Shown: positions 1 to 36,688 of the stretch, piece after piece
How the letters are laid out: the number at the start of each line of letters is the position of its first letter
Numbering within the stretch: position 1 is the stretch's first letter
Source: Octopus bimaculoides
Taxonomy: Eukaryota
Direction of reading: 5' to 3'
Assembly (NCBI RefSeq): GCF_001194135.2
Contig: NC_069005.1
Span: 14,536,095-14,576,722 of the forward strand
DNA length: 40,628 nucleotides
Notes under the pieces: model-generated
What the model was told of the DNA's origin: nothing
Seen by the model: the letters and a program-made list of their open reading frames with translations, nothing else
Database searches by the model: none
Position numbers and translations under genes: made by a program

Positions 1-233
1 GGCACATAAAAGACACCATTTCGAGCGTGGCCGTTTTCGTGCGGGTGACACGTAAAAGCACCCACTACACTCTCTGAGTGGTTGGCGTTAGGAAGGGCAT
101 CCAGCTGTAGAAACTCTGCCAAATCAGACTGGAGCCTGGTGTTGCCATCCGGTTTCACCAGTCCTCAGTCAAATCGTCCAACCCATGCTAGCATGGAGAG
201 CGGACGTTAAACGATGATGATGATGATGATGAT
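1..233 (+). mobile_element. SINE-like repeat family A, 3' part, ending in (GAT)n tail
   Basis: GTTGGCGTTAGGAAGGGCATCCAGCTGTAGAAAC...GCATGGAGAGCGGACGTTAAACGATGATGAT; homologous copies at 4399-4770 (-), 20688-20967 (+) and 38367-38465 (+). Confidence 0.8.
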
Positions 234-367
234 ATACAAATATATATATGTATATATATATACATTTATATAAAGGAACATTAATCATAGAACAAACATC
301 AAATTCGAGTCAACAACTTTATATACAACACCATACCTCAAATATTTGATCATAAATATTACCATGG

Positions 368-499
368 TTCTTAAACATATAAAAATATACATATACATAA
401 AAACACAAAAGGTAAAAAATATATATGCGAATAAAATACAAAGATAAGCCTATCAAAAGGTAAATATAAATGACTAAAAATTCATAAAAATTCTAAAGC
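368..499 (+). repeat. Left arm of ~130-bp inverted repeat (partner 2972-3100)
   Basis: TTCTTAAACATAT...AGGTAAAAAATATATATGCGA...AAGCCTATCAAAAGGTAAATATA...ACTAAAAATTCATAAAAATTCTAAAGC aligns to the reverse complement of 2972-3100 with two small indels. Confidence 0.85.
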
Positions 500-659
500 A
501 TGTCGTGCTACTAAAAAACTGAATATACTAAGATAAAATAAAATATCAATCGAGCAAAAATATATTTTACTCCCGTCACACAAGAGTACTTCTAAAAGTT
601 CAATTCTTAAAACCATGGTAGGTTAGTGTAAAAAGAGTTCCACAATATCAATTCAAACA

Positions 660-742
660 CACCTATGGCCATTTCGGGAGCTCATTGCCGTGGTTCAATT
701 ACATTCAAAGTGCATCACGGCAATAACCCCCTCATCAGGATG
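660..742 (-). ncRNA. Minimal type I hammerhead ribozyme, intact core
   Basis: Minus strand: CATC-CTGATGA (738-732)-stem II of 16 bp with one bulge and a 23-nt loop-GAAA (675-672)-palindromic ATGGCCAT stem III-AUA cleavage triplet-GGTG, which pairs with CATC. Confidence 0.8.
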
Positions 743-2108
743 AACAGGAAACACGCATAGAACTGTGTCTTTATTGCCCACAAGGGGTGCACATAGACGG
801 GACTTTACAAGACATGTGGGACATATAACAATGAAAGAATAAAATATGATAATATTAATGGCAATGAAAAATGGAAATGGAACCACTCACCCCACTTACG
901 AGCAGCCCCATTTTCTACTTTTTAAAACCTGATCCCTCTAGCATATATCAAAACCCATTTCTTCCAATAACCTGTCGAAAGTCGTGTAATTGGGTAATAA
1001 ATCCCAGTCATAGTTCAACTCTCAACAACTGTAACCATGCTCAAAAGTATACATTATCTCTTCTTGTTCCCTTGTTGGGAGCACACACCTGTGCCACTCC
1101 TCAATGTTATCGAACCCATTAGTTCCTGTTTCCTTTACTTTGTTCCATGAAAGAACTCATCTATCAATTCGTTATTGGATCCATATAGCATAGAAGCTTT
1201 ACATTTCTTTTTCCTTTTTTTTTTTTGACTTGGGGGAAGGAGTTTGAAATTCTTTCTGTGTGCTTGCTTTCTTTTTTCGGTTTTTGTGTCGGATGGGAAT
1301 AGGTAAGCTTGGTGTCTGCTAGTGAGGGGGTCTGAGAAGGTGTGGGTTGGGGTTTACAGTTCAAATCACTTGCCTTCTTTCTCTTCCTTACAACGACTTT
1401 CTCCCAATTACTCACTGTTGCTACTACTTCCTCCTCCTTTCTGGGTTCTTCCTTTCTAGAACTCTTCGACCTCTTCTTTTTGCTCCTCCATCTTGTTCAA
1501 TCTCTTTTCCTCTGCTTTTTTGGTTTGTGAAGGGCACTCCGCTCTGATGTGGCCCTTCTGGCCACATCTAAAGCAGCGTGGGACTCTACCCTCCAGCATG
1601 ACCATCATTATTGCTTCATCCATGATTATTAACTCTGTGATGTTTTCCAGAGTCTCTGTTGATCCTTAGACAATCATGTTTAATATTTGTCCCTTCCACA
1701 ACACACTTTCCTTTTTTGTGGCCTGGAGAACTACTATGTTGTCCTCATTACCAAAGAGGACAGTGTCTGCTACCCAGGCTACATCAATTTCTGGTGGGAT
1801 CCCTTCTACACAGATCCTTGTTGTTCTCAGTCCTCTGTAAGTGGGCAGAAGCACCACTTCCTCACTTTTAATAGATGTCACCACATGTTTCCTTGTAGAC
1901 ACCGCATCTCTGAACCTCACCTTCACCACTCCAAATATCGAACCTCTTGCAAGGTATGTAATGTCTCTCCAGGTCAGCCTCAGAGCCTTTTCCTCCTGTT
2001 CCATCGTTACAATATCAATTTTACCTTTACTTATTGAATAAGTTTGATAACTTATTGTCCTTTCCTTGATGCTGTCTTTTGTTTCTTGCAGTGGGGGAGG
2101 ATCTTTAT

Positions 2109-2263
2109 TCCTGTTCTATATTTAAGAGGTGAGGAATTATGTACATTATTCATATTATTTACAGTTAGCCACTATGCCATATGCCCGTGGGCATATGGCA
2201 TAGTGAGTGGTTAAAAGTACGGGCTGCTAACCCCAAGATTCCGAGTTCGATTCCAGACAGTGA

Positions 2264-2295
<32 letters not shown>

Positions 2296-2437
2296 TCGAA
2301 AAATACCTTAGGAATGAGAACCCAGGTTCGAAATTTCCCCAAGACACCTGATGAAGGCTGGAGGGTATATCAGCCAAAACGTTTTGTTAACAACAAACGA
2401 GATGAGGACAAATATCTGTCAATTGTAAATAATGTAA
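2109..2437 (+). mobile_element. tRNA-headed SINE with (AAT)n linker and Penelope-like hammerhead tail; head-to-head rearranged; 8-bp TSD
   Basis: A-box-like TGGCATAGTGAGTGG, B box GAGTTCGATTCC (2243-2254), (AAT)n, then CTGATGA motif. Flanked by ATCTTTAT at 2101-2108 and 2438-2445. Confidence 0.75.
2343..2388 (+). ncRNA. Degenerate minimal hammerhead ribozyme (G12 mutated)
   Basis: GACAC-CTGATGA-A-GGCTG(GAGGGTATAT)CAGCC-AAAA (GAAA expected)-CGTT-TTGTT; palindromic ACGT stem III. Confidence 0.6.
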
Positions 2438-2971
2438 ATCTTTATGCCTTCCAAATTCTGGCATTTTGCCACGTCAGCAAAATCCCTCTTTTCCATGTTT
2501 AATCTATTGTCCATCTTCCAGACAGCTTCCAACAATTCTTCTTCCGCTGACAATATGTCTGAGTAGCTATATTCTTCTACAAACATGCTTTTCCCAAGCT
2601 ATCTCTCCTCTGCAAGAAGAGAAAGCAGATACAAACAAACCATAAGCGCAAAAACCGCTGCAAAGCAGCACAAAATATTCAAACATTATAATAACACAAC
2701 ATTATAGAGAGAACATTATAATCACAGAACAAAACTAAAAAGCAAACACTATAATGCACAGAACAAATCTAAAAAGCTCATGCAACGCCGCAAGGCTAGT
2801 TTTAAAGATAAACCACAGGACCAGTCCAAATTTTCTAACAAAAAACTGAATTATTTCATTGCTAAACATGCAGGTGGCTGTTGTTAATAGAAATTTAAAC
2901 TTGCCAGTTTCAAAACCCCATAAAACTATATATTATTTATATTTACTACATCTACTTTTACTTCTATACAC

Positions 2972-3100
2972 GCTTTAGAATTTTTATGAATTTTTAGTTG
3001 TCTATATTTACCTTTTGATAGGCTTCTCTATATATTTGTATTTTACTCGCATATATATTTTTTACCTTCTGTGTTTTTATATTTTCTATATGTTTAAGAA
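2972..3100 (-). repeat. Right arm of ~130-bp inverted repeat (partner 368-499)
   Basis: Reverse complement matches 368-499. Confidence 0.85.
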
Positions 3101-3101
3101 T

Positions 3102-3538
3102 CAGTGGTCGGAAATAAGGTAATGGATGACTCGTTCGAGAAAATAACATTCTTCCACTGCTCTAGGGATCAATTCTGTAGGTTTTTACTCCACTTTAAAT
3201 GCTTTGCAACGTTTGTTTTTGAAAGTAGTGGTTTTCTGATTGCAGCCCTCCCAGTACTTCTTGATACACCAAATATTTTGGCTGTGTTCGTTATGCTAGC
3301 ACATGCCATACGAGCACCAACAATTTGATTTCTTTGAAAGTCCAATAGATCTGACATTTTAATGAATTTTAATTACCTTTTTCTGATGATATCTGAAAAG
3401 AAACAGCAATTTTAGTAAAACATATTAAGCAACACTAATAATAAATAAAAAATAAAAAAAATAAACAAGCTTTTGATGGTTTTATAGATATTTCATAATT
3501 ATGATGCTAGATGTGTCCATTATTTTCCCCAACCCCTG
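3102..3538 (-). mobile_element. Internally deleted Tc1-family DNA transposon
   Basis: ORF 3169-3357 MSDLLDFQRNQIVGARMACASITNTAKIFGVSRST|GRAAIRKPLLSKTNVAKHLKWS is a Tc1 paired-like HTH fused to a downstream segment. Imperfect TIRs CAGTGGTCGGAAATAA and (rc) CAGGGGTTGGGGAAAATAA. Confidence 0.8.
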
Positions 3539-3905
3539 NNNNNNNNNNNNNNNNNNNNNNNNNNNNNNNNNNNNNNNNNNNNNNNNNNNNNNNNNNNNNN
3601 NNNNNNNNNNNNNNNNNNNNNNNNNNNNNNNNNNNNNNNNNNNNNNNNNNNNNNNNNNNNNNNNNNNNNNNNNNNNNNNNNNNNNNNNNNNNNNNNNNNN
3701 NNNNNNNNNNNNNNNNNNNNNNNNNNNNNNNNNNNATGGGTATAATGCAATTACAAAGATAAATTATACAGATACTATTGACAAACCAATAATTTATTTA
3801 TTTTATAATTATATTACATAATATACAGTGAATATAATATTATATAAGAAACAATTATTAAAAAGGCCAAAAAGGCCAACAATTTGCTTTGACTTATATA
3901 CATTT

Positions 3906-3908
<3 letters not shown>

Positions 3909-3970
<62 letters not shown>
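3909..3970. repeat. (TA)n(CA)n microsatellite
   Basis: Direct reading. Confidence 0.95.
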
Positions 3971-4398
3971 TAATAACAGTTACATTATATATATAAGTCA
4001 CTTCAAGGTCATGGTTTAAAGATAGACAGAATTCCATGTGAAAGGACCGCTGGATTGTAAAAATTAGTTCAAATGTCTATGTATTATGAGTGTGAACGTT
4101 AACTATTCAATCATACATCAATTACAATTAAAAAACAACACAAACTCTTTAATAGACGATACAACAAAGTAAGTGCAATCCACAACCATCAAAATTCACT
4201 TCATTACATCTCAAACACATACTAATTGAAACCCGTTCATGTCCAAGAGAGTCTCTCGTCACCACAACATACGACGATGATATGTGTATGTGTATATATA
4301 TTAGGTAGGTATATATATGTGTGTGTGTGTGTATGTATATATTTATATACGTATATACATGAATATGTACATATATGTATATATATATATATGTATCT

Positions 4399-4770
4399 CA
4401 TCATCATCATTGTTTAACGTCTGCTTTCCATGCTAGCATGGGTTGGACGATTTGACTGAGGACTGGTGAACCAGATGGCTACACCAGGCTCCAATCTGAT
4501 TTGACAGTTTCTACAGCTGGATGCCCTTCCTAACGCCAACCACTCCAAGAGTGTAGCTGGTGTTTTTACATGCCACCGACACGAAGGCCAGTCAGGAGGT
4601 ACTGGCAACGGCCACGCTCGAAATGGTGTATTTTACATGCCACCTGCACAGGAGCCAGTCCAGCAGCGCTAGCAACGAACTCCCTCGAATGTCTTTTCAC
4701 GTGTCACTGGCACAAGTGCAAGGAAGGCGACATTGGTAACGATCACGCTCAAATGGTGCTATTTACGTGC
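4399..4770 (-). mobile_element. SINE-like family A copy with internal sub-repeats
   Basis: Reverse complement of 1-233, (CAT)n at the left end, repeated TTTTACATGCCAC / CACGCTCGAAATGGTG units; truncated by a gap. Confidence 0.8.
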
Positions 4771-4870
4771 NNNNNNNNNNNNNNNNNNNNNNNNNNNNNN
4801 NNNNNNNNNNNNNNNNNNNNNNNNNNNNNNNNNNNNNNNNNNNNNNNNNNNNNNNNNNNNNNNNNNNNNN

Positions 4871-4955
4871 TATATATATATATATATATATACATGTATA
4901 TATATATATACACATATATACACACACATATGTATACATATATACACATATATAT

Positions 4956-4988
<33 letters not shown>

Positions 4989-5151
4989 CATACATAAATA
5001 GATGTGTGCTTGTGTACGTGGGTATGCACACATATATATATATATGCATACATGTATACATATATATACATACATATATATATGTACATGTATATATACA
5101 TACATACGTACATATATATACATACACATGTATACGTACACACATGTATAC

Positions 5152-5239
<88 letters not shown>

Positions 5240-5310
5240 GTGTGCTTGTGTACGTGGGTATGCGTGCTGTTTGCCCGGACGGTGTGTGCGTGCACATGTC
5301 TGTATGTGTA
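4871..5310. repeat. Compound (TA)n/(CA)n/(TACA)n microsatellite field
   Basis: Direct reading; ATAAATAGATGTGTGCTTGTGTACGTGGGTATGC occurs twice (~4994 and ~5230). Confidence 0.95.
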
Positions 5311-5431
5311 CATGTATCATATATCGTCCCTTGTGAGTCACAGTTTTGTGAGGCAAAACGGTTGTGAAACACTTCAATAGAGTGAGGTTTCGCTGCTATT
5401 TGTAGCAGTTCGCAATACATATACAGAAACA

Positions 5432-6916
5432 AGGCAGCGAGCTGGCAGAAACGTTAAGCACGCCGAGCGAAAGGCTTAGCGGTATTTTGTCTGCCGTTAC
5501 GTTCTGAGTTCAAATTCCGCTGAGGTCGACTTTGCCTTTCATCGTTCGAGGTCGATAAATTAAGTACTAGGGATCTAGTCTTTCTCATTCGCAAAACGAG
5601 CACCCCGACACACACACACCTTAATTTTGCTCAGGTTGCTTTCAATTTTGGTGTATCGGTGCAACTCTGAACTTGGATTATGATCAACCAATTATGTTAT
5701 CTCGTAAATTAAAGAATCTGGTGTTATTTCACAGTTAAAGTTGGGATATTTGGGTAATTTTAGCCATTCAACAGACAGCGTGGCATTAGCAGCTTGTTAC
5801 CATGACAACCGCACGCTATGTTGTGGTTCACTGTTGTCTATGTTGATTTTTCACAATTCTTTACATCACGAGATTCTTTTCACTCGCGTGTTTTGTTTTA
5901 ATTTTTCTGTGTTAGTATATTACATATTTTTCTTTACTTCTATATGTTAGTATTTTTCTGTGCTTTTTTCTCTGTGTTAGTATTTTTACATATTTTTATT
6001 TCATGTATCTTATAACTGGATTTATGATTTCACTAGGTTAATTCTGTTCATAAAAATTCAAATTGGGAGTATTTCTTAAGCCGTTAGCTTCACATTTCAA
6101 CAGCTTAACTGAAATTTAGCCCACGTAACAGGAACTGAGAGGGATATCATGGAACAGAGAAACTGTGGGTGACACAGATAATTTGACATTATTTGACATT
6201 CTGCATACAAAAAAAGTATAAGATACAGGTATTCTTTTCTTTGTTGTCCAGTGTTATTCTTATCGTAGCTTACCAAATCCAAGCATGAAAACGTTACTCA
6301 ACTTTTGGAGTTTTGGAGACAGACGCTTCACACACATGAATGCATAAATGTACCTATAAACATATATGAATACATACATCCACATGCACTTATATATTAA
6401 TGATGTACACAAATACATAACAGGTATATATAATACTGAAATGCGCATAAAGTAAACACATGCAGACAAATATATTAATATAACAATTAAAAAAAAATAA
6501 AAACATACAATCAATGAAGAGATAAAAGAAACAGTAAAATGATACATGTTGATTTTATTAGGTATTTCTGTTTATTTAGAAACCTTTAATGAACAGGTCA
6601 GACGCTAAACTAAATTTCACACGGCACAACCTTAAAGTTGACATTTTCTGTCTCGCTATTGGCTAAAAATATAGTTTTTTTTTCGAATTTGAAACCTCTA
6701 ACTTCTTTCTCCACAACATCAAACCTTCAAAGCAATGAAAACTGGAAGGCTACATTATTATAGCCGATTTTTCAGATTTTTCACTGTCTTTTAAAAAATG
6801 CATATTTTACAAATGGAAGAAAAAAATAGATCCAGTACCAGTTGCGTACTGGGTCAATCTAATCGACTGTCCCCTCCCCCAAAATTTCGGGTCTTGTGCC
6901 TGGAGTAGAAAAGATT
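5432..6916 (+). mobile_element. tRNA-type SINE family B split in two (5432-5566 and 6836-6916) by an insertion
   Basis: The 5' half ends GTCGATAAATTAAGTA and the 3' half resumes TACCAGTTGCGTACTGGGTCAATCTAATCGACT. Intact copies at 39250-39450 run ATAAGTACCAGTTG contiguously. Confidence 0.75.
5567..6835. mobile_element. Non-coding ~1.27-kb insertion with short imperfect TIRs and TA duplication (putative non-autonomous DNA transposon)
   Basis: Ends CTAGGGATCTA / TAGATCCAG; TA at 5565-5566 and 6836-6837; splits a SINE. Confidence 0.55.
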
Positions 6917-7054
6917 CGTATTTTTCTGGACGGTTTACAATGAAAAGTTTCGTTCGAAACGCTTGCGTTCTGGACTGAAAAAGGGGCCAGCGAGCGGCAA
7001 GTCCTTTTGATAAACCGAAAATTTGAATAAACGCTTCAAGAGTAAATAAGTTTC

Positions 7055-7315
7055 TTTTGCCCCCAAGTTACGGGAAACGTAAAGAAACCAGCACCTCTTG
7101 TCAAGCAGTGGTGGGGATAAACACAAAGATATAATAGATTACATACATACGCGCGCGCGTGTGTGTGTATACAATACCACGCACACACGATAGGCTTCAT
7201 TCAATTTCCATCGACCAAATCCAGTCACAAGAATTTTGCCCAAGCTGCTGTGTAGTAAAACTGAACCTGAAACCACATGAACGGGAAACAAATTTCTTGC
7301 CACACAGCCTCGCCT
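7055..7315 (-). mobile_element. Degenerate SINE family C copy
   Basis: AAGTTACGGGAAACGTAAAGAAACCAGCA...TTGTCAAGCAGTGGTGGGG...CCACACAGCC is homologous to 26786-27178. Confidence 0.65.
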
Positions 7316-8999: not shown

Positions 9000-11900
9000 T
9001 TGACTGTCATTGGAACCGGGAAGGCGTTTTAATTGTCCTGCTCTTGCACGTGGTTACTCGGTTCTTTGATGACAGTTCCTTGTGATGGGTTGGTGTGATA
9101 TGGCTACGGCGGCCCGTTTGGTGGTTGGGCTACCTGAACGGGGCTGTCAATATCGAGACGGGCCGGTTTCAACCTATCGATGGAGATTGTGTCTTGTCCG
9201 CCAATTAGGAGTTGGAATGATTTATCTCCCGGATGTATGACTTGATATGGACCATCGTAGGGTGACTGGAGGGGTTTTCGTCGTGTGTCATTTGGTACGG
9301 ATGATCTGGATGTACCGTGTGTCGACATGGGAACAGGGCGTAACTGGTCCACGCTGTCTCTCAGTTAAGCGAGGTACCTTTTGACATTTGGGTCTGACTT
9401 CGTATTCGGAAGGAACTCTCCTGGCACTGTAAGAGGGGCATCATACACCATTTCCGCGGAGGAAGTGTTGAGATTTTCTTTTGGGTCGATGAGGATTCCC
9501 AGCATCACCCGTGGGAGTTGGTCAATCCAATTTGGTCCGTTAAGTCTGNNNNNNNNNNNNNNNNNNNNNNNNNNNNNNNNNNNNNNNNNNNNNNNNNNNN
9601 NNNNNNNNNNNNNNNNNNNNNNNNNNNNNNNNNNNNNNNNNNNNNNNNNNNNNNNNNNNNNNNNNNNNNNNNNNNNNNNNNNNNNNNNNNNNNNNNNNNN
9701 NNNNNNNNNNNNNNNNNNNNNNNNNNNNNNNNNNNNNNNNNNNNNNNNNNNNNNNNNNNNNNNNNNNNNNNNNNNNNNNNNNNNNNNNNNNNNNNNNNNN
9801 NNNNNNNNNNNNNNNNNNNNNNNNNNNNNNNNNNNNNNNNNNNNNNNNNNNNNNNNNNNNNNNNNNNNNNNNNNNNNNNNNNNNNNNNNNNNNNNNNNNN
9901 NNNNNNNNNNNNNNNNNNNNNNNNNNNNNNNNNNNNNNNNNNNNNNNGGTTCATAGTTGCCGAGGGGTGCTTTGGTGTGTTGATGGACCTTGGCTTGCTG
10001 ACGGGATGCAGGTCCTGGTCTAGTCCCCGATTTGCTTGGCCATACCGTGCCAGATAAATTTACATGACAGCGGCCGCCGTGTGGCTTTAGTACCTGGGTG
10101 GAGAAGTCCGTGAATAACGTGGAAAACTTTCTTGCGCCAGGCTGATGGGGACGATCGGTCGTGGCTTCCCAGTGGGTACGTCACACAGTTTGGTTGTGCA
10201 ACGAAAGTGATGTGATGGCAGTGCGGTAGGCCCTGATCTCGTCATCTGTCTGTTGGGTTGCAGCCATAGCTTCGTAATCCAGGATTTCCGTTATTGGCGC
10301 TAAGTAGGTGTGAGAGCAGGTAGGATCAGGAGAGTGCGTTGACAACTGGGTTGCCCTTGCCGGCTATGTGTTGGATGTCTGTGGTGTACTCAGAAATGGC
10401 CGATAGCTGTCGTTGCTGGCGTGCAGACAAAGGCTCCGAGAGCTTGCTCACAGCAAAAGAGAGTGGTTTGTAATCGGTGAACACTGTAAAGGTGCGGTCT
10501 TCAAGGAAATATTCCCCGTCGAAAGCACTGTATTTCTGTTCAGTGGGTCGTAGTTGTCGACTGAAGAATGCAAACGGTCGCCATTGACTGTTGATGTGTT
10601 GTTCCAAAACGCCCCCAATGGCTGTGTCGGATGCGTCAACTGTGAGTGCGGTCCAAGCTGACATATGAAGATGGGGTAGCATGGTTGCTTTAGCTAGGGC
10701 TTGCTTTGTGCATTCGAAGGTTGAAGTCATTGTACTATCCCACTCCACCTGTCTCTTTGAACCGTCTCTTGACAGTGCCTCGTATAAGGGTCTCATCACT
10801 CTTGCTGCAGAAGAGATGAAGTGATGGTAAAAGTTTACCATGCCCACGAATTGGTGTAGAACCTTGCTTGTGGTGGAGCGTAGAAAGGATAGGATAGCTT
10901 TCACTTTTTCTGACAGGGATGTAGCGCCGGCACTTGTAATTCGATGTTCCAAGAAGTCGGTTTTTGTCACCAAAAACGCACTTGGCGGTGTTGATTACTA
11001 AACTATTTCTTATGTAGCTCCGCATTTTGGCTTGCAATAAGGATATCATCTAAATAGGCAAAGACAAAATCGTGACCTCTGTATACGGTGTTCATCAAGT
11101 GTTGGAAGGATTGTGCTGCGTTTTTCAACCCAAAGGGTGTACGTGGAAATTCGTACAGACCGAAAGGAGTGATCACAACGGTTTTCGATACACCGTCGTC
11201 TTATACTGGTATTTGGTGGTATCCTTGGATAAGGTCAGCCTTCGAGAAAACCGAGCATCCGGCTAGCTGAGCTGAGAAACCCTGTATGTGTGTGGAATGG
11301 GGTAGCGGTTAGGTGTCGTATCTGCGTTGAGACGTCGGTAATCTCTGCAAGGTCGATAACCTCCTTTGGATTTGGGAGCTACATGCAGGGGTGACGACCA
11401 GGGACTGCTTGATCGGCGAACTATGCCCAATGCCTCCATATTGTCGAACTCGGCCTTTGCGATTGCAAGTTTGTCTGGTGATAGATGACGTGCGCGACTG
11501 TACACTGGGGGGACGGTGGTGGAGATGTGGTGTGTCACCCCGATGCAGGCTGTAGGTTTGGAAAATGTCAGAGTGGTGAGATTGGAGCNNNNNNNNNNAC
11601 ACGGAAGCGTATGTGTTATTATCGATGAGTCGTCTTCTCCGCAAATCAAGCATTAGCAAGTATGCTCAAAGAAAGTCTGCCCCGATTATTGGCTGACGGA
11701 CATCGGCGATGGTGAATGCCAATGTGTATTTTTGTGAGCCGATGTTGAGAGAAAGGGTGCGGCGGCCGTACGCCTTGATTGTGGATCCGTTGGCGGCTGT
11801 TAAAAGTTGGCTCCGCTTTCCATGACGGAGGTCCCTTGCCGACGCCAGGACCACGCTGACTTATGCTCCTGTGTCGATTAGGAACCTGCGTCCGGAGCTC

Positions 11901-14088: not shown

Positions 14089-14263
14089 GGTACTACTAAA
14101 GCAGAGTGGTCCCGAACGCGCAGTCGCGCGTCCGCGCTAGCTAACCCTAAACATAAACACATGTATTCATTTTCACACGCGTACGCGCACTTTTTGTAGG
14201 ATCGACCACTCACGACTAGCTAGCGCGGGTGCGCGTTCGGGACCACTCTGCTTTAGTAGTACC
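14089..14263. mobile_element. 175-bp MITE, Mutator-like (9-bp TSD)
   Basis: Perfect 34-bp TIR GGTACTACTAAAGCAGAGTGGTCCCGAACGCGCA (14089-14122 / 14230-14263) plus a 12-bp inner IR; TSD AGCAAACGA at 14080-14088 and 14264-14272. Confidence 0.9.
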
Positions 14264-14371
14264 AGCAAACGATTTGTGAAAACAAAAAAGCTGCGTGTGT
14301 GTGTGTGTGTATATATTGTTGGCGATTTTTTTCCTTCGTCTTCCTTTTCTCTTGGACTTTCCTCTGTCTCC

Positions 14372-14408
14372 TGTTTCTGAAGAAGAGCTTTGCTCGAAAC
14401 GTAAAATA
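14372..14408 (+). ncRNA. Minimal type I hammerhead ribozyme, intact core
   Basis: TGTTT-CTGAAGA-A-GAGC(TTT)GCTC-GAAA-CGTA^AAATA; 5-bp stem I, 4-bp stem II, palindromic ACGT stem III, GUA cleavage triplet after 14403. Confidence 0.75.
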
Positions 14409-14530
14409 CCCTTTCATTGCCTGAGCGTCTCATTAATACTTTGCATGTACCACATGCTCGCGTTGTTGTTTTTTTTCTTGTATTGTTTTATTTTATTTGT
14501 ATATATATATATGTAAATAAAACAATATAT

Positions 14531-20687: not shown

Positions 20688-20967
20688 TGCCAGTGCAGGT
20701 GCCACTTAAAAAGCATCCAGTCCACACTGCAAAGTGGTTAGCATTTGGAAGGGCATCCAACTGTAAAAACTGTCCCATAACTGACCTTGCCTGTGCTGGT
20801 GCTACATAAAAAGACTCGGCCCACACTGCAGAGGAATGGCATCCAACCATAAAAAAACCATCCCAAAACAGACAAAGAAGTATGATTAAGGTTTCTGCCT
20901 GGCTGGCTCCTATCAAACCATCCAACCCATGCCAGCATGGAAGGAGGACATTAAACAATGATGATGT
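20688..20967 (+). mobile_element. SINE-like family A copy
   Basis: GGAAGGGCATCCAACTGTAAAAAC...CCAACCCATGCCAGCATGGAAGGAGGACATTAAACAATGATGAT. Confidence 0.75.
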
Positions 20968-28897: not shown

Positions 28898-29118
28898 TGA
28901 TGTCAATTACTTTACTAAATTCTTCATTCTTTTCAAAATTAATTGAAACAAAGTGTACCTCATCAGAAATGTAATTAAGTGTTGTTTCAACTCTCTTTTC
29001 TTCTCCATAATAGTTATCCTATGTTTGCAGTAATTTGCTTCTTTGATCAGTAAACATTTCCACAGTTTTATTTCATTATTTTCCTTTTTCTGTATATTTA
29101 CAGTTGAAGACTTTTACA

Positions 29119-32100
29119 ATGGAAGATGTAAAGAGAAGCAATATTATGGAAGACAGTGGAAATTTTTCAAATTCCCTCTTATCGGTTATCAACAAGAACG
29201 CCGTAAATGATACAGGCAATGCAGCTAATTCACCAAAGATTCCTGTTATTGTGGTCCCTGACTCCAAAGATACAGAAGATTCAGTGCCAAAGCATCACCT
29301 CAAATTCCGAATGAGAATAAACAACAGTAATGAGGCTCTGTTTGTAATTCTTCCAAACAGCATTATTTGTTTGATATGTTATAAGAAATTCCTGCATATA
29401 TCATTGTTAAAAAGCCACATCTTGTGGCATCTTCATCGTGACGATGTTCCCAGCAATAATTTATGTCATTCTTGTAAATCTAATGCTGATATCTCTGACT
29501 GTCCATCATTCAAGTTGATTAAGAAGATCATGAGAAATTTCTTATTATCAACAATAAAAAAGCGACAATCTTTGAAAAATAATTCCCGGAGCTGTGGAGA
29601 TGATCCAAATAACGACAGAGTGATGATTACAGAAGACACGTTTACTATAGAAAATGCAACAACAGAAACATCAAGTAACAATTCCCATTTGGATAACAAT
29701 AATTCACTAATTCCTTCTAATACTGACAATAACAATAAACCAAAGGACTTGAAAGACTACAAAGGAAACTCCATCCAAGATGATTTATTTATAGAAAAGG
29801 CTGTAACTTCTGACCAAAAGAAAAGAAAAAAAATTTATGAAAGTTCAGCTGTCAGTGTTAAGAGTTGTGTAGAACCTGTAATAGATTCAAGTGAATTTAT
29901 GCTTGTAAATGGACAATACAAATGTTTAAGTTGTTCAAAAGATTACACTCAAAACACAATCAGTAATCATATAATGTGGCATTTTCACAAAGGTGTTGAC
30001 TTGTGCTCTAAGCTGCACTACACAAGTTTCAGTTCTGGTGACACAATCTGTCCATTAGTAGTTCAGATTATAAACTATTTAGTATCTAAGGAAGGAAAAC
30101 CAATACAAGTGAACTGGGGTAAGAATAATGCTGGGAAAATAATTTTCAAAGTCATGTTGATGAAAACTGGATTGAATGCAGATACAGTTGTTGATAATTC
30201 TATTAGTCTGACAGAAAAAAACAATGTATCCAGTTTTCAGAGTGATAATGCCACTCCACCAGTTGCCGAGTACACCATAAATGAACCATTAGTCCAGGAC
30301 CATTCTGATGGCAGCGACACACAAAACTTAACTTGCAACTCTAAAGCTGGCTCTAGTCATCCAACAGATAAAAATTTGATAAGTGAATGTTCAAATGACA
30401 CTCTTGCAGCGTGTGATAAATCAGATGAAAGTTTACCATTAGAGAACGACAACCAGCCAGTACGTAAAGCAAAGACAGAAGTAACAACAGCAGGCACTGG
30501 TGGAAATGATTTACATGTTCATCCAGTTAAGAAATCAGATTCTTCTGCTGATGTCTGGAGTTTTTATAAATGTATGGTAACAGGCTGCAACTATTCCACT
30601 TTATTTCCTGATAATTATTTGAAACATCTGAAACGACTACATGAAAATATGCACTTTTACCAATGTACCCATTGCGACTTTACAGCTGACACTTATAGTC
30701 TTATAGTAAAACATCTGAAAATTCATACTCACCCAACAGAATTTCTATATCCTTGTGGTTCCAGTGATTGTAGCTATTACACAAGGGTTCTGAGCCTGTT
30801 ACCCAAACATTTTACTTCAAGTCACATCAACTGTAAAAAAGTCGTCTGCAAGCACTGTGCTACTGAATTCCCAGACCTTAATCAGTTATTGGAACACTAC
30901 CATTGTAATCTCCTGAAGTCAGTTAAATGCTCTTACTGTCCTGCACGAGACACTGTCCGTCAACATATCCTTCACCATCTCTCTTTATCACATCCAGGGA
31001 AGCCGCGACAAATTATTGTCAGCAGCCAACTTGTATGCAGTACCAAGAAACAAGTATTTGAGCATTTAAAACTACTGACAGAGAGTACAGTCAAAGTTAT
31101 GAAGGAAACCCTAATATCAGAACAAGAAGAAACTGCAGGTTTTAAGACAAGCTGCTTGAATAATGACAGTACAGATGATGGAAGTCATAGTGCTTCTGAA
31201 AAATATGTAAATGGTTTGATAAATCCAAAAAATCATACAGAAGAACAGTGTAAGACTGAGGATTGCTCTAATGAACAGAGTGAAACTTATGGTTGTTCTA
31301 GTAAACAGGGTGAGGCTAATGATTGTGCTAGTGAACAGTGTAATGGTTTGAGTGATTTTAAACAGGCACGAGAACAAAAAGGTGTTAAAATGAAGCAGCT
31401 GGGAAAACAAAAGAACAGAGTAAAGATCAAATTAAAAAATTCTTCTCAAGATATCTCATCAATAGAAGGGTTTAATTGGGGTGAACAGATGCACAATAAT
31501 ACTATCTCAGTCTCTAATTTTATTAATTTTGATATAGCTGGAAAAGAACTTGATGCTTGCTTGAAAATTTGCTACAAATTTATGGATCAGAATTTAAAGT
31601 GCAACCTTTGCTTCCAAACTAGAAAGTCGAAACAGGAGATTCATCTTCACATTCTGCAGTATCACTTCCATTGGTATCTCTGGCAGTGTTTTAAATGTAA
31701 AACAAATACGTATTCACTTGAAGAAATGCATTGGCATTATCAGCACAAACATCAAGGCTGGATTATTTGTGTCAAATTTCTTTCCTTACCACAGCTGGCA
31801 AAAGGTTCTGATGGCAAACTTTGCCTTCAGAAAGAACAAAAGATTGTTTCAGTGAAATCTCAGAAATCAAGGAGGACTGAACTGTACAAACAGATTCAAC
31901 AGCAATGTGTATATGAAATGGTGGCTTCAAGAAAGTCTAAGAGGAAGGAAGAAACAACCAATAATAAGCAGAGAAACAAAAAACTGTTTATATTTCTAAG
32001 CGACTCTCAGCCGTTGGATGAAGCGGAGAAAATTCCAGATAATGATGAAAGTACTAATAATCTTCGAAAAGGTGGATTTGAATCTGAAACAAATAACAAA

Positions 32101-35100
32101 CATAAAAAATTACACAAAAGATCTTTAAATGATAAAAATCACGGTAAGATGAAGAAAATGAAGTTTTCTTCACCCTTGAATAGAAAAATTGCGATAGATA
32201 CCTCCAACACAGATTTAAAGATTGAGAAGAATATCAAACAAGATAATAATTATGAAAATGACTATGATAATAATTATAATACAAATAAATTACTGCTTAA
32301 TGTTGAAAAACACTTAATGGTTGCTCAAAATTCAATTCCATTAAGGAGAGTCAAAAAGGAGAAATGCTTATTGTATCTTAGTAAAGAAACATCTTCAGTT
32401 AATGATACAACTTTGAAACATAACCAAGCCTTTCTAACTAGTAACATAAATACAGCATTTGATAATAGTTGTAAAATAAAAAGTGAGCCAACTGTCAATA
32501 ACAATAAGAGGAAGATCAGTTCAGATACTGTTGAACTCAGCAAAGAGACAACTGGCCCAGGTGTTAAAATCACAATAGTGAAGGCTGACTCAGATGTTGA
32601 AATTAGTAAGGTAAAGACTGGCTCACCTCTTGATAATAGTAAAACAAAGACTGGCTCACCTGTCCATAACAGTAAAACAAAGACTGGCTCACCTGTCGAT
32701 AACAGTAAAACAAAGACTGGCTCACCTGTCCATAACAGTAAAACAAAGACTGGCTCACCTGTCGATAACAGTAAAACAAAGACTGGNNNNNNNNNNNNNN
32801 NNNNNNNNNNNNNNNNNNNNNNNNNNNNNNNNNNNNNNNNNNNNNNNNNNNNNNNNNNNNNNNNNNNNNNNNNNNNNNNNNNNNNNNNNNNNNNNNNNNN
32901 NNNNNNNNNNNNNNNNNNNNNNNNNNNNNNNNNNNNNNNNNNGAAGACTGGCTTGGCTGTTGATAGCAGTAAAGCAAAGACTGGCGCAGCTGTTGATAAC
33001 AGTAAAGCAAAGACTGGCGCAGCTGTTGATAACAGTAAAGTGAAGACTGGCTCAGCTGTCGATAGCAGTAAAGCAAAGACTAGCTTGGCTGTTGATAGTA
33101 GTAAAGCAAAGATTGGCGCAGCTGTTGATAACAGTAAAGTGAAGACTGGCTCAGCTGTTGATAACAGTAAAGCAAAGACTGGCGCAGCTGTTGATAACAG
33201 TAAAGTGAAGACTGGCGCAGCTGTTGATAACAGTAAAGTGAAGACTGGCTCAGCTGTTGATAGCAGTAAAATGAAAACTGGCTCGGCTGTCGATAGCAGT
33301 AAAGCAAAGACTGGCTTGGCTACTGATAGTAGTAAAGCAAAGACTGGTGCAGCTGTTGATAACAGTAAAGCGAAGACTGGCTCAGCTGTTGATAACAGTA
33401 AAGTGAAGACTGTCTTGGCTGTTGATAGTAGTAAAGTGAAGACTGGTTTGGCTGTTGTTGAGAGCAGTAAAGTGAAGACTGTCTTGGCTGTTGATAGCAG
33501 TAAAGTGAAGACTGGTTTGGCTGTTGTTGAGAGCAATAAAGTGAAGACTGTCTTGGCTGTTGATAGTAGTAAAGTGAAAACTGGTTTGGCTGTTGTTGAG
33601 AGCAGTAAAGTGAAGACTGTCTTGGCTGTTGATAGCAGTAAAGTGAAGACTGGTTTGGCTGTTGTTGAGAGCAATAAAGTGAAGACTGGCTTGGCTGTTG
33701 AGAGCAATAAAGTGAAGACTGGCTTGGCTGTTGAGAGCAATAAAGTGAAGACTGTCTNNNNNNNNNNNNNNNNNNNNNNNNNNNNNNNNNNNNNNNNNNN
33801 NNNNNNNNNNNNNNNNNNNNNNNNNNNNNNNNNNNNNNNNNNNNNNNNNNNNNNNNNNNNNNNNNNNNNNNNNNNNNNNNNNNNNNNNNNNNNNNNNNNN
33901 NNNNNNNNNNNNNNNNNNNNNNNNNNNNNNNNNNNNNNNNNNNNNNNNNNNNNNNNNNNNNNNNNNNNNNNNNNNNNNNNNNNNNNNNNNNNNNNNNNNN
34001 NNNNNNNNNNNNNNNNNNNNNNNNNNNNNNNNNNNNNNNNNNNNNNNNNNNNNNNNNNNNNNNNNNNNNNNNNNNNNNNNNNNNNNNNNNNNNNNNNNNN
34101 NNNNNNNNNNNNNNNNNNNNNNNNNNNNNNNNNNNNNNNNNNNNNNNNNNNNNNNNNNNNNNNNNNNNNNNNNNNNNNNNNNNNNNNNNNNNNNNNNNNN
34201 NNNNNNNNNNNNNNNNNNNNNNNNNNNNNNNNNNNNNNNNNNNNNNNNNNNNNNNNNNNNNNNNNNNNNNNNNNNNNNNNNNNNNNNNNNNNNNNNNNNN
34301 NNNNNNNNNNNNNNNNNNNNNNNNNNNNNNNNNNNNNNNNNNNNNNNNNNNNNNNNNNNNNNNNNNNNNNNNNNNNNNNNNNNNNNNNNNNNNNNNNNNN
34401 NNNNNNNNNNNNNNNNNNNNNNNNNAACTGGTTTGGCTGTTGTTGAGAGCAGTAAAGTGAAGACTGTCTTGGCTGTTGATAGCAGTAAAGTGAAGACTGG
34501 TTTGGCTGTTGTTGAGAGCAATAAAGTGAAGACTGGCTTGGCTGTTGAGAGCAATAAAGTGAAGACTGTCTTGGCTGTTGATAGCAGTAAAGTGAAGACT
34601 GGTTTGGCTGTTGTTGAGAGCAGTAAAGTGAAGACTGGCCCGGCTGTTGAGAGCAGTATGGTGAAGATTGGCTTGGCTGTTAAGAGCAATAAAGTGAAGA
34701 CTGGCTTGGCTGTTGTTGAGAGCAATAAAGTGAAGACTGGTTTGGCTGTTGAGAGCAGTACAGCAAAGACTGGCTTGGCTGTTGAGAGCAGTATGGTGAA
34801 GATTAGCTTGACTGTTGATAGCAGTAAAGCGAAGACTGGCTCGGCTGTTGTTAGCAGTAAAATGAAGACTGGCGCGGCTGTTGATAGCAGTATGGTGAAG
34901 ATTGGCTTGATTGTTGAGAGCAATAAAGTGAAGACTGGCTTAACTGTTAAGAGCAATAAGGTGAAGACTGGCTCAGATGCTGAAGTCAGTAAGGTGACAA
35001 CTGACCCTAAAGTCACTAAGGTGAAGACTGAATTAGCTGTTGATATCTGTACTGTAGAAAATGGTTCTGATGTTGAAATTAGTGAGGTGAAAAGTAGCTT

Positions 35101-36688
35101 AAATATTGACATCAAGAGAATGAAAAGAAAAGGTGGTTTGGATATTCGGGTGAGTAAGGTAAAGACCAACTCAGATATTGAAACCATCAGTAAGATGGAA
35201 ACTGATTCAACCGTCAGTTGTCATAAGGTGAAGTCTGGCTGCCCTGTTGGAATCAATAAGATGAAGACTGATCCAACTGCCAGTAGCAAAAAGGTGAAGA
35301 TTGACTCAACTGTTAAAGCTACTAAAGTGAAGAATGAATCAAATGTTGGTAACAGGAAACAATCCACAGTCAAAAATGCCCGTAAAAGACATTTGTCGAG
35401 TGAAGTTACATCTAATAAGAAAAAAGTTCGTGTAAAATGTAGTACTGACAGTCAAGACAAAAAGAATGGATCAAGTCCCAATGGCTGTCATAGGATAAAG
35501 AATGCTGTATATTTTGATATTTCCAGTAAGAAAGATTTGTCGGCTACCAACATTTCTTGTAGGAAAACTATCACAACAAAATCTAACAGTTCATTTAAAT
35601 ATGTCGATAGTTCTGTTACTCTTAATAAGAACAAAAACGTAACAAATGTCAGCAATTCTAGTAAGAAAATACTCAGCACCTCCACTTCCAGTGTAGTATT
35701 ATCTAAAGCTGATAGTTCCAGTAAAAAGATTCTATCTTGTGCTCACACTTCTGATGTAAAATCTTCATCTAAAGCCAACACAGCCAATAAAAAGATTTTA
35801 TCTAAAGCTGACACATCCAGTAAAAAGATTTTATCTAAAGCCAACACATCCAGTAAAAAGATTTTATCTAAAGCCAACACATCCAATAAAAAGATTTTAT
35901 CTAAAGCTGATACATCCAGTAAAAAGATTTTATCTAAAGCCAACACATCCAATAAAAAGATTTTATCTAAAGCTGACACATCCAATAAAAAGATTTTATC
36001 TAAAGCCAACACATCCAATAAAAAGATTTTATCTAAAGCTGACACATCCAGTAAAAAGGACTTATCTAAAGCCAACACTCAAAGCAAAAAGATTTTATCT
36101 AAATCTAATATGTCCACAAACAAAATGTTGTCGATAGTTGACACTTCCCAGAACAAGACTTCATCTAAAGCCAACATATCTGTTAAGCCTGTACAAAATA
36201 ACACTAACATTTCCAATAAGAATACTTTGACAAATGCAAATGTTTCACAGAAGGGAAGGGCTGATACTACTACTACCACTTCATTTACTGGGGTGGTACA
36301 TCAAAGTGTTTCTGCCTCCAAGAGAGGCTCAGATGCTGTTAGAAAATCTAGTAAAGTAGCAGCCAGTTCTAAAAAATGTAAATTATGTGAATTCACATCA
36401 TTGAAGATCTTTAAACTGATAAAGCACATGACTGTGAAACATGCCAAACAATATAAAGACTTCATTACAGAAAAAGAAATAAAAATTATAAAAGATGCAA
36501 TTGTCAAGAACTCTAGAAACGAGTATGTTTGTCCATTTTGCAAGCATTGTTGTAGCATTCGCACAGATTGTAAATTACACATATATCACAAGCATTTGCA
36601 TTTAAAAACTCTGAAGTGCAACCAGTGCATGTTTTTTACAAGGTTCCCATTTCAGCTAGAACATCACCTTTCATTTCATTTGAAATAA
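29119..36688 (+). CDS. Large multi-C2H2 zinc-finger protein (~2,500 aa, ~12 dispersed fingers, central 11-aa repeats), single coding exon
   Basis: Acceptor TTTTCCTTTTTCTGTATATTTACAG ends at 29103; ACAATGG start at 29119. ORFs 29104-34446 and 34433-36688 join across the N gap 33758-34425 with the same repeat on both sides. Fingers include CLICYKKF..HILWH, CMVTGC..HLKRLH, CTHC..HLKIH, CSYC..HLSLSH, CNLC..HILQYH, CFKC..HYQHKH, CKLC..HMTVKH, CPFC..HIYHKH, CNQC..HLSFH. An upstream coding exon cannot be excluded. Confidence 0.88.
32605..34990 (+). repeat. Coding minisatellite, 33/36-bp units (KTGSPVDNSKT / KTGLAVDSSKV / KTGLAVVESSKV)
   Basis: Direct reading; two assembly gaps lie inside the array. 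Confidence 0.95.
35768..36097 (+). repeat. Coding minisatellite, ~10 x 33 bp (SKA[D/N]TS[S/N]KKIL)
   Basis: TCTAAAGC(T/C)(G/A)ACACATCCA(G/A)TAAAAAGATTTTA repeated. Confidence 0.95.

What the first reader, a model, noticed from the sequence alone, without database searches (positions are those of the whole stretch)
240..3100. Candidate new non-autonomous retroelement: inverted termini + gag-only ORF + downstream hammerhead ribozyme
Seen, reading the minus strand: ~130-bp repeat (3100-2972), T-rich leader with a splice-acceptor-like TTTCTCTTCTTGCAG (ending 2610), one gag-like ORF with a CCHC knuckle (2586-938), AATAAA (775-770), an intact hammerhead (742-660), then the same repeat inverted (499-368). 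No RT or endonuclease is present. Established: minimal hammerheads, inverted partial pLTRs and retained introns are hallmarks of Penelope-like elements (PLEs), which encode RT+GIY-YIG rather than a CCHC gag; Tx1/L1 ORF1 normally precedes ORF2; retrozymes are non-coding. Inference: this may be a protein-coding retrozyme-like parasite that makes its own RNA-binding protein and borrows RT in trans. Alternative: a chance nesting of a LINE ORF1 fragment between two PLE LTR fragments.
Basis: partly seen in the sequence, partly recalled or inferred. Interest (0 to 1): 0.85.

Follow-up and report, generated by a model that had tools for sequence, protein, structure and literature searches.

The report
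Dead ORF1-only LINE beside hammerhead remnant
The supposed new "gag plus ribozyme" retroelement is two ordinary things lying next to each other in an octopus genome: a dead copy of a LINE that has lost its reverse-transcriptase gene, and an older inverted-repeat remnant that carries a Penelope-type hammerhead ribozyme.

Summary
All the listed features are at the stated coordinates: inverted arms 2968-3100 / 368-503, AATAAA 775-770, and a hammerhead motif cleaving at 664/663. The "ORF" 2586-938 is not intact. It has a ~337-bp insertion, two in-frame stops and at least two frameshifts.

The ORF is the ORF1 of an octopod LINE, with two RRM-like domains and one CCHC knuckle. In Octopus vulgaris, O. 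sinensis and Argonauta hians, homologous ORF1s are followed directly by an ORF2 with an AP-endonuclease, an RT and zf-RVT. Three other loci carry the same ORF1-only layout as the window; two of them are bounded by 15-19-bp target-site duplications. These are HAL1-like "half-LINEs".

Full-length and ORF1-only copies all end in the same motif, ...CCCCTTGTGGGnAATAAAG(A). In the ORF1-only copies the sequence beyond it differs at every locus. In the window this end lies about 20 nt upstream of the hammerhead, so the hammerhead, spacer and arms are flanking DNA. None of them recurs at the other seven loci (118 kb).

The hammerhead-bearing inverted repeat looks like a Penelope-like-element remnant, but that could not be tested. 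Interest is low to moderate.

The parts
2968..3100 (+). Left arm. It is an inverted copy of the last ~133 nt of the hammerhead-bearing unit, whose 3' end points outwards.
   Evidence: Inverted-repeat pairs I3 and I11, self-BLAST 2968-3108 versus 503-361 at 82.7%, and the alignment. No copy at the seven other octopod loci.
2587..2967 (-). Leader. The part nearest the ATG is the LINE 5'UTR (TGCTGCTTTGCAGCGG resembles TGCTGTTCGCAGCGG at L003). The 5' boundary of the LINE is unresolved, so the distal part may belong to the older host element.
   Evidence: Sequence reading. nhmmer finds no significant match for the leader. The alignment of 5' ends was inconclusive.
938..2586 (-). Decayed LINE ORF1 with two RRM-like domains, one CCHC knuckle, a basic linker and a C-terminal motif. 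It is a pseudogene.
   Evidence: Three-frame translation. Pfam zf-CCHC, E = 1e-5. 524 relatives at E<=1e-3; the ten cluster representatives looked up that carried a source name were all octopod. AlphaFold model with pLDDT 91, matching tandem-RRM proteins. tblastn with the L004 ORF1 gives 41% identity, E = 1.6e-42.
1534..1575 (-). CCHC zinc knuckle, CFRCGQKGHIRAEC.
2109..2445 (+). Secondary insertion of tRNA-like SINE type with an (AAT)n run. It interrupts ORF1.
   Evidence: ORF1 homology to P0001 and L003 breaks here. ARAGORN finds no intact tRNA.
763..937 (-). LINE 3'UTR, ending in the family's terminal motif CCCCTTGTGGGCAATAAAGA (786-768). The LINE ends about 3-5 nt later.
   Evidence: nhmmer matches to L008 (E = 2e-11), L003 (E = 5.7e-5), L004, L005 and L007. 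Motif scan. Colinear alignment with the L008 ORF1-only copy, diverging right after AATAAAGA.
657..745 (-). Minimal type I hammerhead motif of the Penelope-like-element style. It lies outside the LINE. Predicted cleavage is between A664 and G663.
   Evidence: Descriptor: 1 hit in the window and 0 in 400 shuffles. Helix II is recovered by the RNA fold. The features match those described for PLE min-HHRs (PMC4209133). Rfam is silent.
504..656 (-). Spacer between the hammerhead and the right arm. It has no relatives in the data held.
   Evidence: No nhmmer or BLAST matches.
368..503 (-). Right arm, the 3'-terminal part of the hammerhead-bearing unit.

Best explanation
The block is a nested composite of two unrelated mobile-element remains.

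(1) Positions ~763 to ~2917-2967 (minus strand) are a dead copy of an ORF1-only derivative of an octopod L1/Tx1-type LINE. It consists of a 5'UTR, ORF1 and a 3'UTR, with no ORF2.
- Shown: its protein belongs to a family whose members sit directly upstream of an AP-endonuclease/RT/zf-RVT ORF2 in full-length elements.
- Shown: ORF1-only copies occur at three other loci. Two of them are discrete units of 1.6-1.7 kb with 15-19-bp target-site duplications.
- Shown: full-length and ORF1-only copies share the terminal motif ...CCCCTTGTGGGnAATAAAG(A).
- Inferred mechanism, as for mammalian HAL1: the element is transcribed from its own 5'UTR, and its ORF1 protein (tandem RRM plus CCHC) coats the RNA. 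The shared 3' end would let the ORF2 protein of an autonomous relative copy it into a new site by target-primed reverse transcription.
- This copy has since been disabled by a SINE-type insertion, two stops and two frameshifts.

(2) The arms (2968-3100 and 368-503), the spacer and the hammerhead (745-657) are older flanking DNA.
- They form a unit of roughly 400-440 bp that carries a minimal type I hammerhead near its 5' end, abutted by an inverted 133-bp copy of its own 3' end.
- Inferred: this is the usual footprint of a Penelope-like element insertion, in which a 5'-truncated copy sits beside an inverted 5'-truncated copy. The hammerhead would act as a dimer through its AUGGCCAU palindrome to process PLE transcripts.
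- The LINE landed inside this remnant, a few nucleotides upstream of the hammerhead.
For: ORF identity:
- Pfam zf-CCHC.
- 524 relatives at E<=1e-3. The ten cluster representatives looked up that carried a source name came from Octopus or Argonauta.
- AlphaFold model with pLDDT 91, showing two RRM-like domains. Foldseek top hits are tandem-RRM proteins.

ORF2 follows homologous ORF1s:
- L004 (O. vulgaris): ORF1 623-2134 and ORF2 2058-5456, with Exo_endo_phos, RVT_1 and zf-RVT.
- L006 (O. sinensis).
- L007 (Argonauta hians) and three units in L008.

ORF1-only units elsewhere:
- L003 at 5458-7055, with a 19-nt TSD.
- L001 at ~9926-11652, with a 15-nt TSD. Each TSD was reached by 0 of 300 shuffles.
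- L008 at 1-1186, colinear with the window as far as AATAAAGA and then divergent.

Shared 3' end:
- Motif scan and nhmmer, with E down to 2e-11.
- In the ORF1-only copies the sequence beyond the motif differs at every locus.

Hammerhead, spacer and arms:
- No match in 118 kb from the seven other octopod loci.
- No ORF2 or PLE RT in the window.
- Hammerhead descriptor: 1 hit versus 0 in 400 shuffles.
- The long helix II, short helix I, G10.1-C11.1 pair and palindromic loop 3 are the published traits of PLE min-HHRs (PMC4209133).
- An inverted 5'-truncated copy adjacent to the unit is described as typical of PLEs (PMC8557442).
Against: - The target-site duplication of the LINE in this window cannot be shown. 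Two candidates, 2980-2968 / 762-751 and 2927-2913 / 765-750, score no better than 378 of 1000 shuffles.
- The 5' boundary of the LINE is unresolved. Insertion into a pre-existing remnant is therefore inferred from the family's conserved 3' end, not demonstrated at this locus.
- The PLE origin of the hammerhead unit is untested. There is no PLE RT or GIY-YIG nearby and no second copy of the arms or spacer.
- Rfam's hammerhead models do not match.
- There are no homologues with which to test covariation.
- The L1/Tx1 assignment rests on domain content only, not on a phylogeny.
- Only four ORF1-only copies were seen, and their ORF1s share just 22-40% identity with one another. "One propagating lineage" versus repeated independent ORF2 losses is therefore open.
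Confidence: 0.72

Rival explanations
1. First reader's model, weakened to a one-off event. A transcript started in the LINE 5'UTR and read through the weak AATAAA into a downstream PLE 3' fragment. A PLE RT recognised that 3' end and retrotransposed the whole 2.6-kb chimera, adding the inverted 133-bp copy at its 5' end.
For: - The arms face outwards, as in PLE insertions (PMC8557442).
- PLEs are reported to mobilise foreign transcripts in trans (PMC8557442).
- The LINE's own TSD is not demonstrable here.
- If the LINE 5' end is at 2967, it would coincide exactly with the inner edge of the left arm.
Against: - No second copy of the combination occurs at the seven other loci holding family members.
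- The LINE homology stops at the family's normal 3' terminus, as expected for an ordinary insertion.
- Nested insertions are the norm in this repeat-rich genome.
- The 5' boundary of the LINE is not established.
Confidence: 0.06
2. The arms are the terminal inverted repeats of a short DNA transposon or MITE of about 570 bp, not PLE fragments. The LINE inserted into its interior. The hammerhead is either a passenger or a chance motif.
For: - The arms are 133 bp, AT-rich, and sit exactly at both ends of the block.
- No PLE protein is nearby.
- MITE-like palindromes occur elsewhere in the window.
Against: - No TSD flanks the arms (and direct reading).
- The termini (TTCTTAAAC...) match no superfamily signature I know; this is from memory.
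- A high-quality PLE-type hammerhead inside the unit fits the PLE reading better.
Confidence: 0.15
3. The hammerhead is a chance match and has no ribozyme function.
For: - Rfam reports no hammerhead family, even at E<=10.
- The fold z-score is only -1.84.
- No homologues exist for a covariation test.
- PLE min-HHRs cleave poorly in vitro (PMC4209133).
Against: - There were 0 hits in 400 shuffles of the window.
- The observed motif far exceeds the descriptor's minimum: a 16-bp helix II and an 8-nt palindrome, AUGGCCAU, at helix III.
- Relaxed-descriptor hits are enriched in octopod DNA, with 4 observed versus 0.57 expected.
Confidence: 0.1

Closest known systems
HAL1 ("half-L1") elements of mammals
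   Same: Both are non-autonomous LINE derivatives that keep the 5'UTR, ORF1 and 3'UTR but lack ORF2. Both share the 3' end with autonomous relatives and are found as discrete, TSD-flanked copies. HAL1 is described in PMC5753468; for the features here.
   Different: The host is an octopod. The parent is an L1/Tx1-type LINE whose ORF1p has tandem RRMs plus a CCHC knuckle, not the coiled-coil/RRM/CTD protein of mammalian L1. Copies carry no poly(A) tail. Whether the ORF1-only copies form a single lineage is unknown.
Type I LINE ORF1 proteins (RRM plus CCHC), as in Tx1 and plant L1 (Khazina & Weichenrieder classification, recalled from memory)
   Same: RRM-like domains are followed by a CCHC knuckle. 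The gene lies upstream of, and slightly overlaps, an APE-RT ORF2 that carries zf-RVT.
   Different: No phylogeny of the RT was made, so clade membership is not established. The family also has a conserved C-terminal motif (Y..LKEEFG.DVG) of unknown function.
Penelope-like elements: minimal hammerheads in pLTRs and inverted 5'-truncated copies
   Same: The hammerhead has the published PLE traits: long helix II, short helix I, G10.1-C11.1 pair, and a 1-bp helix III with a palindromic loop. An inverted copy of the 3' end flanks the unit (PMC4209133 and PMC8557442).
   Different: No RT or GIY-YIG ORF is present and there is no direct pLTR. Helix II, at 16 bp with a 23-nt loop, is longer than the 6-8 bp reported. 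The family could not be traced to any autonomous PLE.
Metazoan non-LTR retrozymes
   Same: Both carry a type I hammerhead that needs dimerisation, and both are non-autonomous.
   Different: Retrozymes are short tandem repeats, each with its own hammerhead, and are non-coding (PMC7229834). Here there is a single hammerhead and no tandem array, and the neighbouring ORF belongs to a different element.
Chlamys-2_cBra, a PLE of the alga Chara braunii with an upstream gag-like zf-CCHC ORF and a 3' hammerhead
   Same: It is a published case in which a CCHC ORF and a hammerhead do belong to one PLE (PMC8557442).
   Different: That element also encodes RT and EN. Here the CCHC ORF is demonstrably a LINE ORF1.

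Membership tests
L1/Tx1-type LINE (ORF1 component) | ORF1 homologues lie directly upstream of an ORF2 that encodes an AP-endonuclease and a reverse transcriptase. | tested here: met
   L004 has ORF1 at 623-2134 and ORF2 at 2058-5456, with Exo_endo_phos, RVT_1 and zf-RVT. L006, L007 and L008 show the same order.
L1/Tx1-type LINE (ORF1 component) | ORF1p has the RNA-binding architecture of RRM plus CCHC. | tested here: met
   zf-CCHC. The AlphaFold model (pLDDT 91) has two beta-alpha-beta-beta-alpha-beta modules. Foldseek matches tandem-RRM proteins, with E = 1.5e-4 and probability 1.0 but TM-scores of only 0.29-0.38.
L1/Tx1-type LINE (ORF1 component) | The RT falls in the L1 or Tx1 clade in a phylogeny. 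| not tested
   Only domain content was examined. The published O. vulgaris annotation lists L1-Tx1 families (PMC13282606).
HAL1-like ORF1-only LINE derivative | The element has a 5'UTR, ORF1 and a 3'UTR, and no ORF2. | tested here: met
   In the window, the ORF1 stop at 940-938 is 175 nt from the family's 3' terminus, and there is no ORF2 by tblastn. The same layout occurs in L001, L003 and L008 1-1186.
HAL1-like ORF1-only LINE derivative | The element is a discrete retrotransposed unit flanked by target-site duplications. | tested here: inconclusive
   Met in L003 (19 nt) and L001 (15 nt), each reached by 0 of 300 shuffles. Not demonstrable in the window.
HAL1-like ORF1-only LINE derivative | The 3' end is shared with autonomous LINEs, the presumed handle for ORF2p acting in trans. 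| tested here: met
   The motif CCCCTTGTGGGnAATAAAG occurs at the 3' ends of both full-length and ORF1-only copies.
HAL1-like ORF1-only LINE derivative | It propagates as a lineage, with ORF1 under purifying selection. | not tested
   ORF1 is intact in L001 (389 aa) and L003 (384 aa) but decayed in the window. ORF1-only copies share only 22-40% identity with one another. No dN/dS was computed.
Penelope-like element | An ORF that encodes a PLE-type RT and a GIY-YIG endonuclease. | tested here: not met
   tblastn of the window with the PLE ORFs taken from L001 found no hit. No ORF of 60 aa or more in 1-4500 resembles an RT.
Penelope-like element | A hammerhead motif in the terminal repeat. | tested here: inconclusive
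   A descriptor-defined minimal hammerhead is present, but Rfam is silent. The repeat shared by the two arms does not include the hammerhead.
Penelope-like element | Tandem or inverted arrangement of 5'-truncated copies. | tested here: met
   An inverted 133-bp copy of the unit's 3' end lies at the opposite end of the block. This is compatible with, but not specific to, PLEs.
Hammerhead ribozyme, type I minimal variant | Conserved core (C3 U4 G5 A6 N7 G8 A9, then G12 A13 A14, then U16.1 H17) with helices I, II and III in register. | tested here: met
   Core at 738-732, 675-673, U665 and A664. Helix I is 4 bp, helix II is 16 bp, and helix III is 1 bp with the palindromic loop UGGCCA.
Hammerhead ribozyme, type I minimal variant | A match to a curated covariance model. 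| tested here: not met
   No Rfam hammerhead family matches at the gathering threshold, or at E<=10 on 126 nt.
Hammerhead ribozyme, type I minimal variant | Covariation in the helices, or demonstrated self-cleavage. | not testable with these tools
   No homologous copy was available, and no octopus genome could be searched by DNA.
Metazoan non-LTR retrozyme | Tandem repeats of about 170-400 nt, each with a hammerhead. | tested here: not met
   There is a single hammerhead. No direct repeat of the unit occurs in the window.

The most novel reading that the evidence does not exclude
The whole 368-3100 block was copied as one RNA by a Penelope-like RT. The RNA would be a LINE-ORF1 transcript that read through into a PLE 3' fragment carrying the hammerhead.
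Probability: 0.05. Interest if true: 0.6.

Novelty: new member of a known kind. Interest (0 to 1): 0.25.

Why it matters
As a new class of retroelement the finding does not hold, which removes a false lead.

The side result is modest but real. Octopod L1/Tx1-type LINEs have produced ORF1-only "half-LINE" copies that share the parental 3' end, and some keep an intact ORF1. HAL1 is the known mammalian example. A cephalopod counterpart with a different ORF1 architecture would help test whether a non-autonomous LINE gains from making its own RNA-binding protein.

The locus also adds a clean example of a Penelope-style minimal hammerhead in a cephalopod.

Tried and rejected
- Rfam scans at the gathering threshold and at E<=10, on 3.3 kb and on 126 nt, gave no hammerhead.
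- The first protein search found only one relative, P0001, and its contig is not on record.
- A profile search with a 28-sequence alignment returned only 4 proteins, because low-complexity tails filled the candidate list.
- The apparent shared box YTGATRAGG after the AATAAA in L001 and L004 suggested that the hammerhead was part of the LINE 3'UTR. I rejected this. The TSD in L001 puts the box in flanking DNA. In L004 it lies beyond the family's 3' motif, in what may be the next unit's 5' end. Neither sequence folds as a hammerhead.
- The PLE fragment just upstream of the ORF1 in L001 suggested a PLE ORF1. I rejected this, because that fragment is a separate insertion into (TA)n.
- The search for a LINE TSD in the window was not significant.
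- The alignment of LINE 5' ends across loci was inconclusive.
- The search with a PLE RT returned metagenome proteins, none of them named as octopus, so no PLE 3' ends could be obtained for comparison.
- Pfam did not recognise the PLE ORFs of L001. Their identification rests on motifs recalled from memory.
- The right flank (361-273) does not continue the Tc1/mariner fragment that abuts the left arm.
Full report
**Source and observation.** The window is a draft assembly with N gaps. Every named relative of its sequences is from an octopod.

- The inverted arms are 2968-3100 and 368-503, at 83% identity over 150 columns and 90-94% in the ungapped cores.
- The polypyrimidine-AG is at 2624-2610 and the ATG at 2586.
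- One CCHC knuckle lies at 1575-1534 (Pfam zf-CCHC, E = 1e-5).
- AATAAA is at 775-770.
- A hammerhead-type motif has its core at 738-732, GAAA at 675-672, and predicted cleavage between A664 and G663.

A descriptor requiring the core, helix I of at least 4 bp, helix II of at least 4 bp and a minimal helix III finds only this site in the whole window. It finds none in 400 shuffles. The real motif is much better than that minimum: helix II is 16 bp with one bulge, and A15.1, loop 3 and U16.1 together form the palindrome AUGGCCAU.

Two caveats apply. Rfam reports no hammerhead family even at E<=10 on 126 nt. The "ORF" is not open: it carries a ~337-bp insertion (2109-2445), TAA at 1668-1666, TAG at 1458-1456 and two frameshifts.

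**What the ORF is.** An exhaustive HMMER search found 524 relatives at E<=1e-3. The ten cluster representatives looked up that carried a source name came from Octopus vulgaris, O. sinensis, O. bimaculoides or Argonauta hians. An AlphaFold model built on 28 of these relatives has mean pLDDT 91. It shows two RRM-like domains followed by the knuckle. Its best PDB matches are tandem-RRM proteins such as IMP3 RRM12, Prp24 and NONO/SFPQ. It is therefore an RNA-binding LINE-type ORF1 protein, not a capsid-type Gag.

**Genomic context of relatives.** I fetched eight loci in all; seven are chromosome-scale octopod records and one (L002) is a 1.2-kb contig from a sequencing run of unnamed origin. Full-length elements were found at four loci:
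- L004 (O. vulgaris) holds three head-to-tail units of 5.28 kb. Each has ORF1 (503 aa) overlapping an ORF2 of 1132 aa with Exo_endo_phos, RVT_1 and zf-RVT.
- L006 (O. sinensis), L007 (Argonauta hians) and three units of L008 (O. sinensis) have the same ORF1-then-ORF2 order.

**ORF1-only copies are a recurring form.** Besides the window, L001, L003 and the first unit of L008 have ORF1 followed within about 330-680 nt by the family's 3' end, with no ORF2.
- L003 is bounded by a 19-nt direct repeat with one mismatch. It splits a SINE.
- L001 is bounded by a 15-nt direct repeat with one mismatch.
- Each repeat was reached by 0 of 300 shuffles.
- ORF1 is intact in L001 and L003.

The closest known analogue is mammalian HAL1, a non-autonomous L1 derivative that encodes only ORF1p (PMC5753468).

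**Where the LINE ends.** Every copy, full-length or ORF1-only, carries the motif GTCCC...CCCCTTGTGGGnAATAAAG(A) near its 3' end. In the ORF1-only copies the sequence beyond it differs at each locus. In the arrays it is followed by the next unit.
- nhmmer aligns the window's 3'UTR to L008 (E = 2e-11), L003 (E = 5.7e-5), L004 and L005, and weakly to L007 (E = 0.059).
- The pairwise alignment with L008 runs colinearly from the knuckle to AATAAAGA and then breaks.
- In the window the motif is at 786-768, and helix I of the hammerhead begins at 745.

**What cannot be shown at this locus.** The LINE's target-site duplication is not recoverable. Two candidates exist: TTCTAAAGCGTGT / TTCTATGCGTGT, and AGTTTTATGGGGTTT / AGTTCTATGCGTGTTT. 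Neither beats 378 of 1000 shuffles. The 5' ends of the family are too divergent to fix the boundary. A one-off co-mobilisation of LINE plus hammerhead by a PLE enzyme is therefore not strictly excluded. I give it about 5%.

**The hammerhead-bearing remnant.** With the LINE removed, what remains is a unit of about 400-440 bp with the hammerhead near its 5' end, preceded by an inverted 133-bp copy of its own 3' end.
- Published descriptions of PLE minimal hammerheads list a long helix II, a helix I of 4-5 bp, a G10.1-C11.1 pair and a palindromic helix III/loop 3 (PMC4209133).
- PLE insertions often carry an inverted 5'-truncated copy next to the unit (PMC8557442).
- Both descriptions fit, so a PLE remnant is the best reading.
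- Against it, there is no RT or GIY-YIG nearby and no second copy of this family to test. A MITE-like origin of the arms remains possible.
- Relaxed descriptor hits are enriched in the octopod DNA examined, with 4 observed versus 0.57 expected. They include a compact second candidate at window ~14369-14410.

**Verdict.** The composite is a nested arrangement, not a new kind of element. Its parts are new members of known kinds: an octopod HAL1-like ORF1-only LINE derivative (a dead copy) and a PLE-style minimal hammerhead in an inverted-repeat remnant.

Noticed in passing
window 14369-14410 (+): A second, compact minimal-hammerhead candidate: CCTGTTT-CTGAAGA-A-GAGCTTTGCTC-GAAA-CG-TA|AAATA. Helix I is 5 bp, helix II is 4 bp, and loop 3 (CG) is palindromic. 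It lies about 100 nt upstream of a (TA)n run, the preferred PLE target. It shows no sequence similarity to the first hammerhead unit.
   Followed up: partly
L004 1-13026; L008 1-14850: Full-length L1/Tx1-type LINEs sit in direct head-to-tail arrays, each unit starting just after the previous unit's AATAAA motif. L004 has three units at 99-100% identity. L008 has an ORF1-only unit followed by three full units whose proteins share 60-90% identity with those of L004. This suggests insertion next to an existing copy, or tandem amplification.
   Followed up: partly
window 14089-14129 / 14223-14263: A 41-nt inverted repeat, 95% complementary, with a 93-nt spacer. It looks like a MITE or foldback element.
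   Followed up: no
window 1-272, 4352-4641, 20693-20966: Three copies of one SINE-like repeat. The first two are in inverted orientation and bracket the whole region studied, which is probably coincidental.
   Followed up: no
window 3110-3357 (-): An N-terminal fragment of a Tc1/mariner-type transposase, with weak HTH matches. It abuts the left arm and does not resume on the other side of the block.
   Followed up: partly
window 10326-11649 (-): ORFs that look like pol fragments of an LTR retrotransposon. This is judged by eye from the translated ORFs and was not scanned.
   Followed up: no
window 29104-36688 (+): A very long open reading frame with C2H2-like finger motifs and dozens of SKVKTG-type repeats, interrupted by N gaps. 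It is probably a host exon.
   Followed up: no
L001 422-2523 and 8497-9190: Two Penelope-like element fragments with RT and GIY-YIG-like motifs. They were recognised by eye, and Pfam is silent on them. The second is a 5'-truncated copy inserted in (TA)n, about 0.8 kb upstream of the LINE unit. The descriptor found no hammerhead in their 3' regions.
   Followed up: partly
ORF1 C-termini (window ~1000-938; P0003, P0008, P0017, L004 ORF1): A short conserved C-terminal motif, roughly Y..(I/L)K(E/Q).F..DVG, follows the basic linker in many family members. It has no Pfam match and its function is unknown.
   Followed up: no
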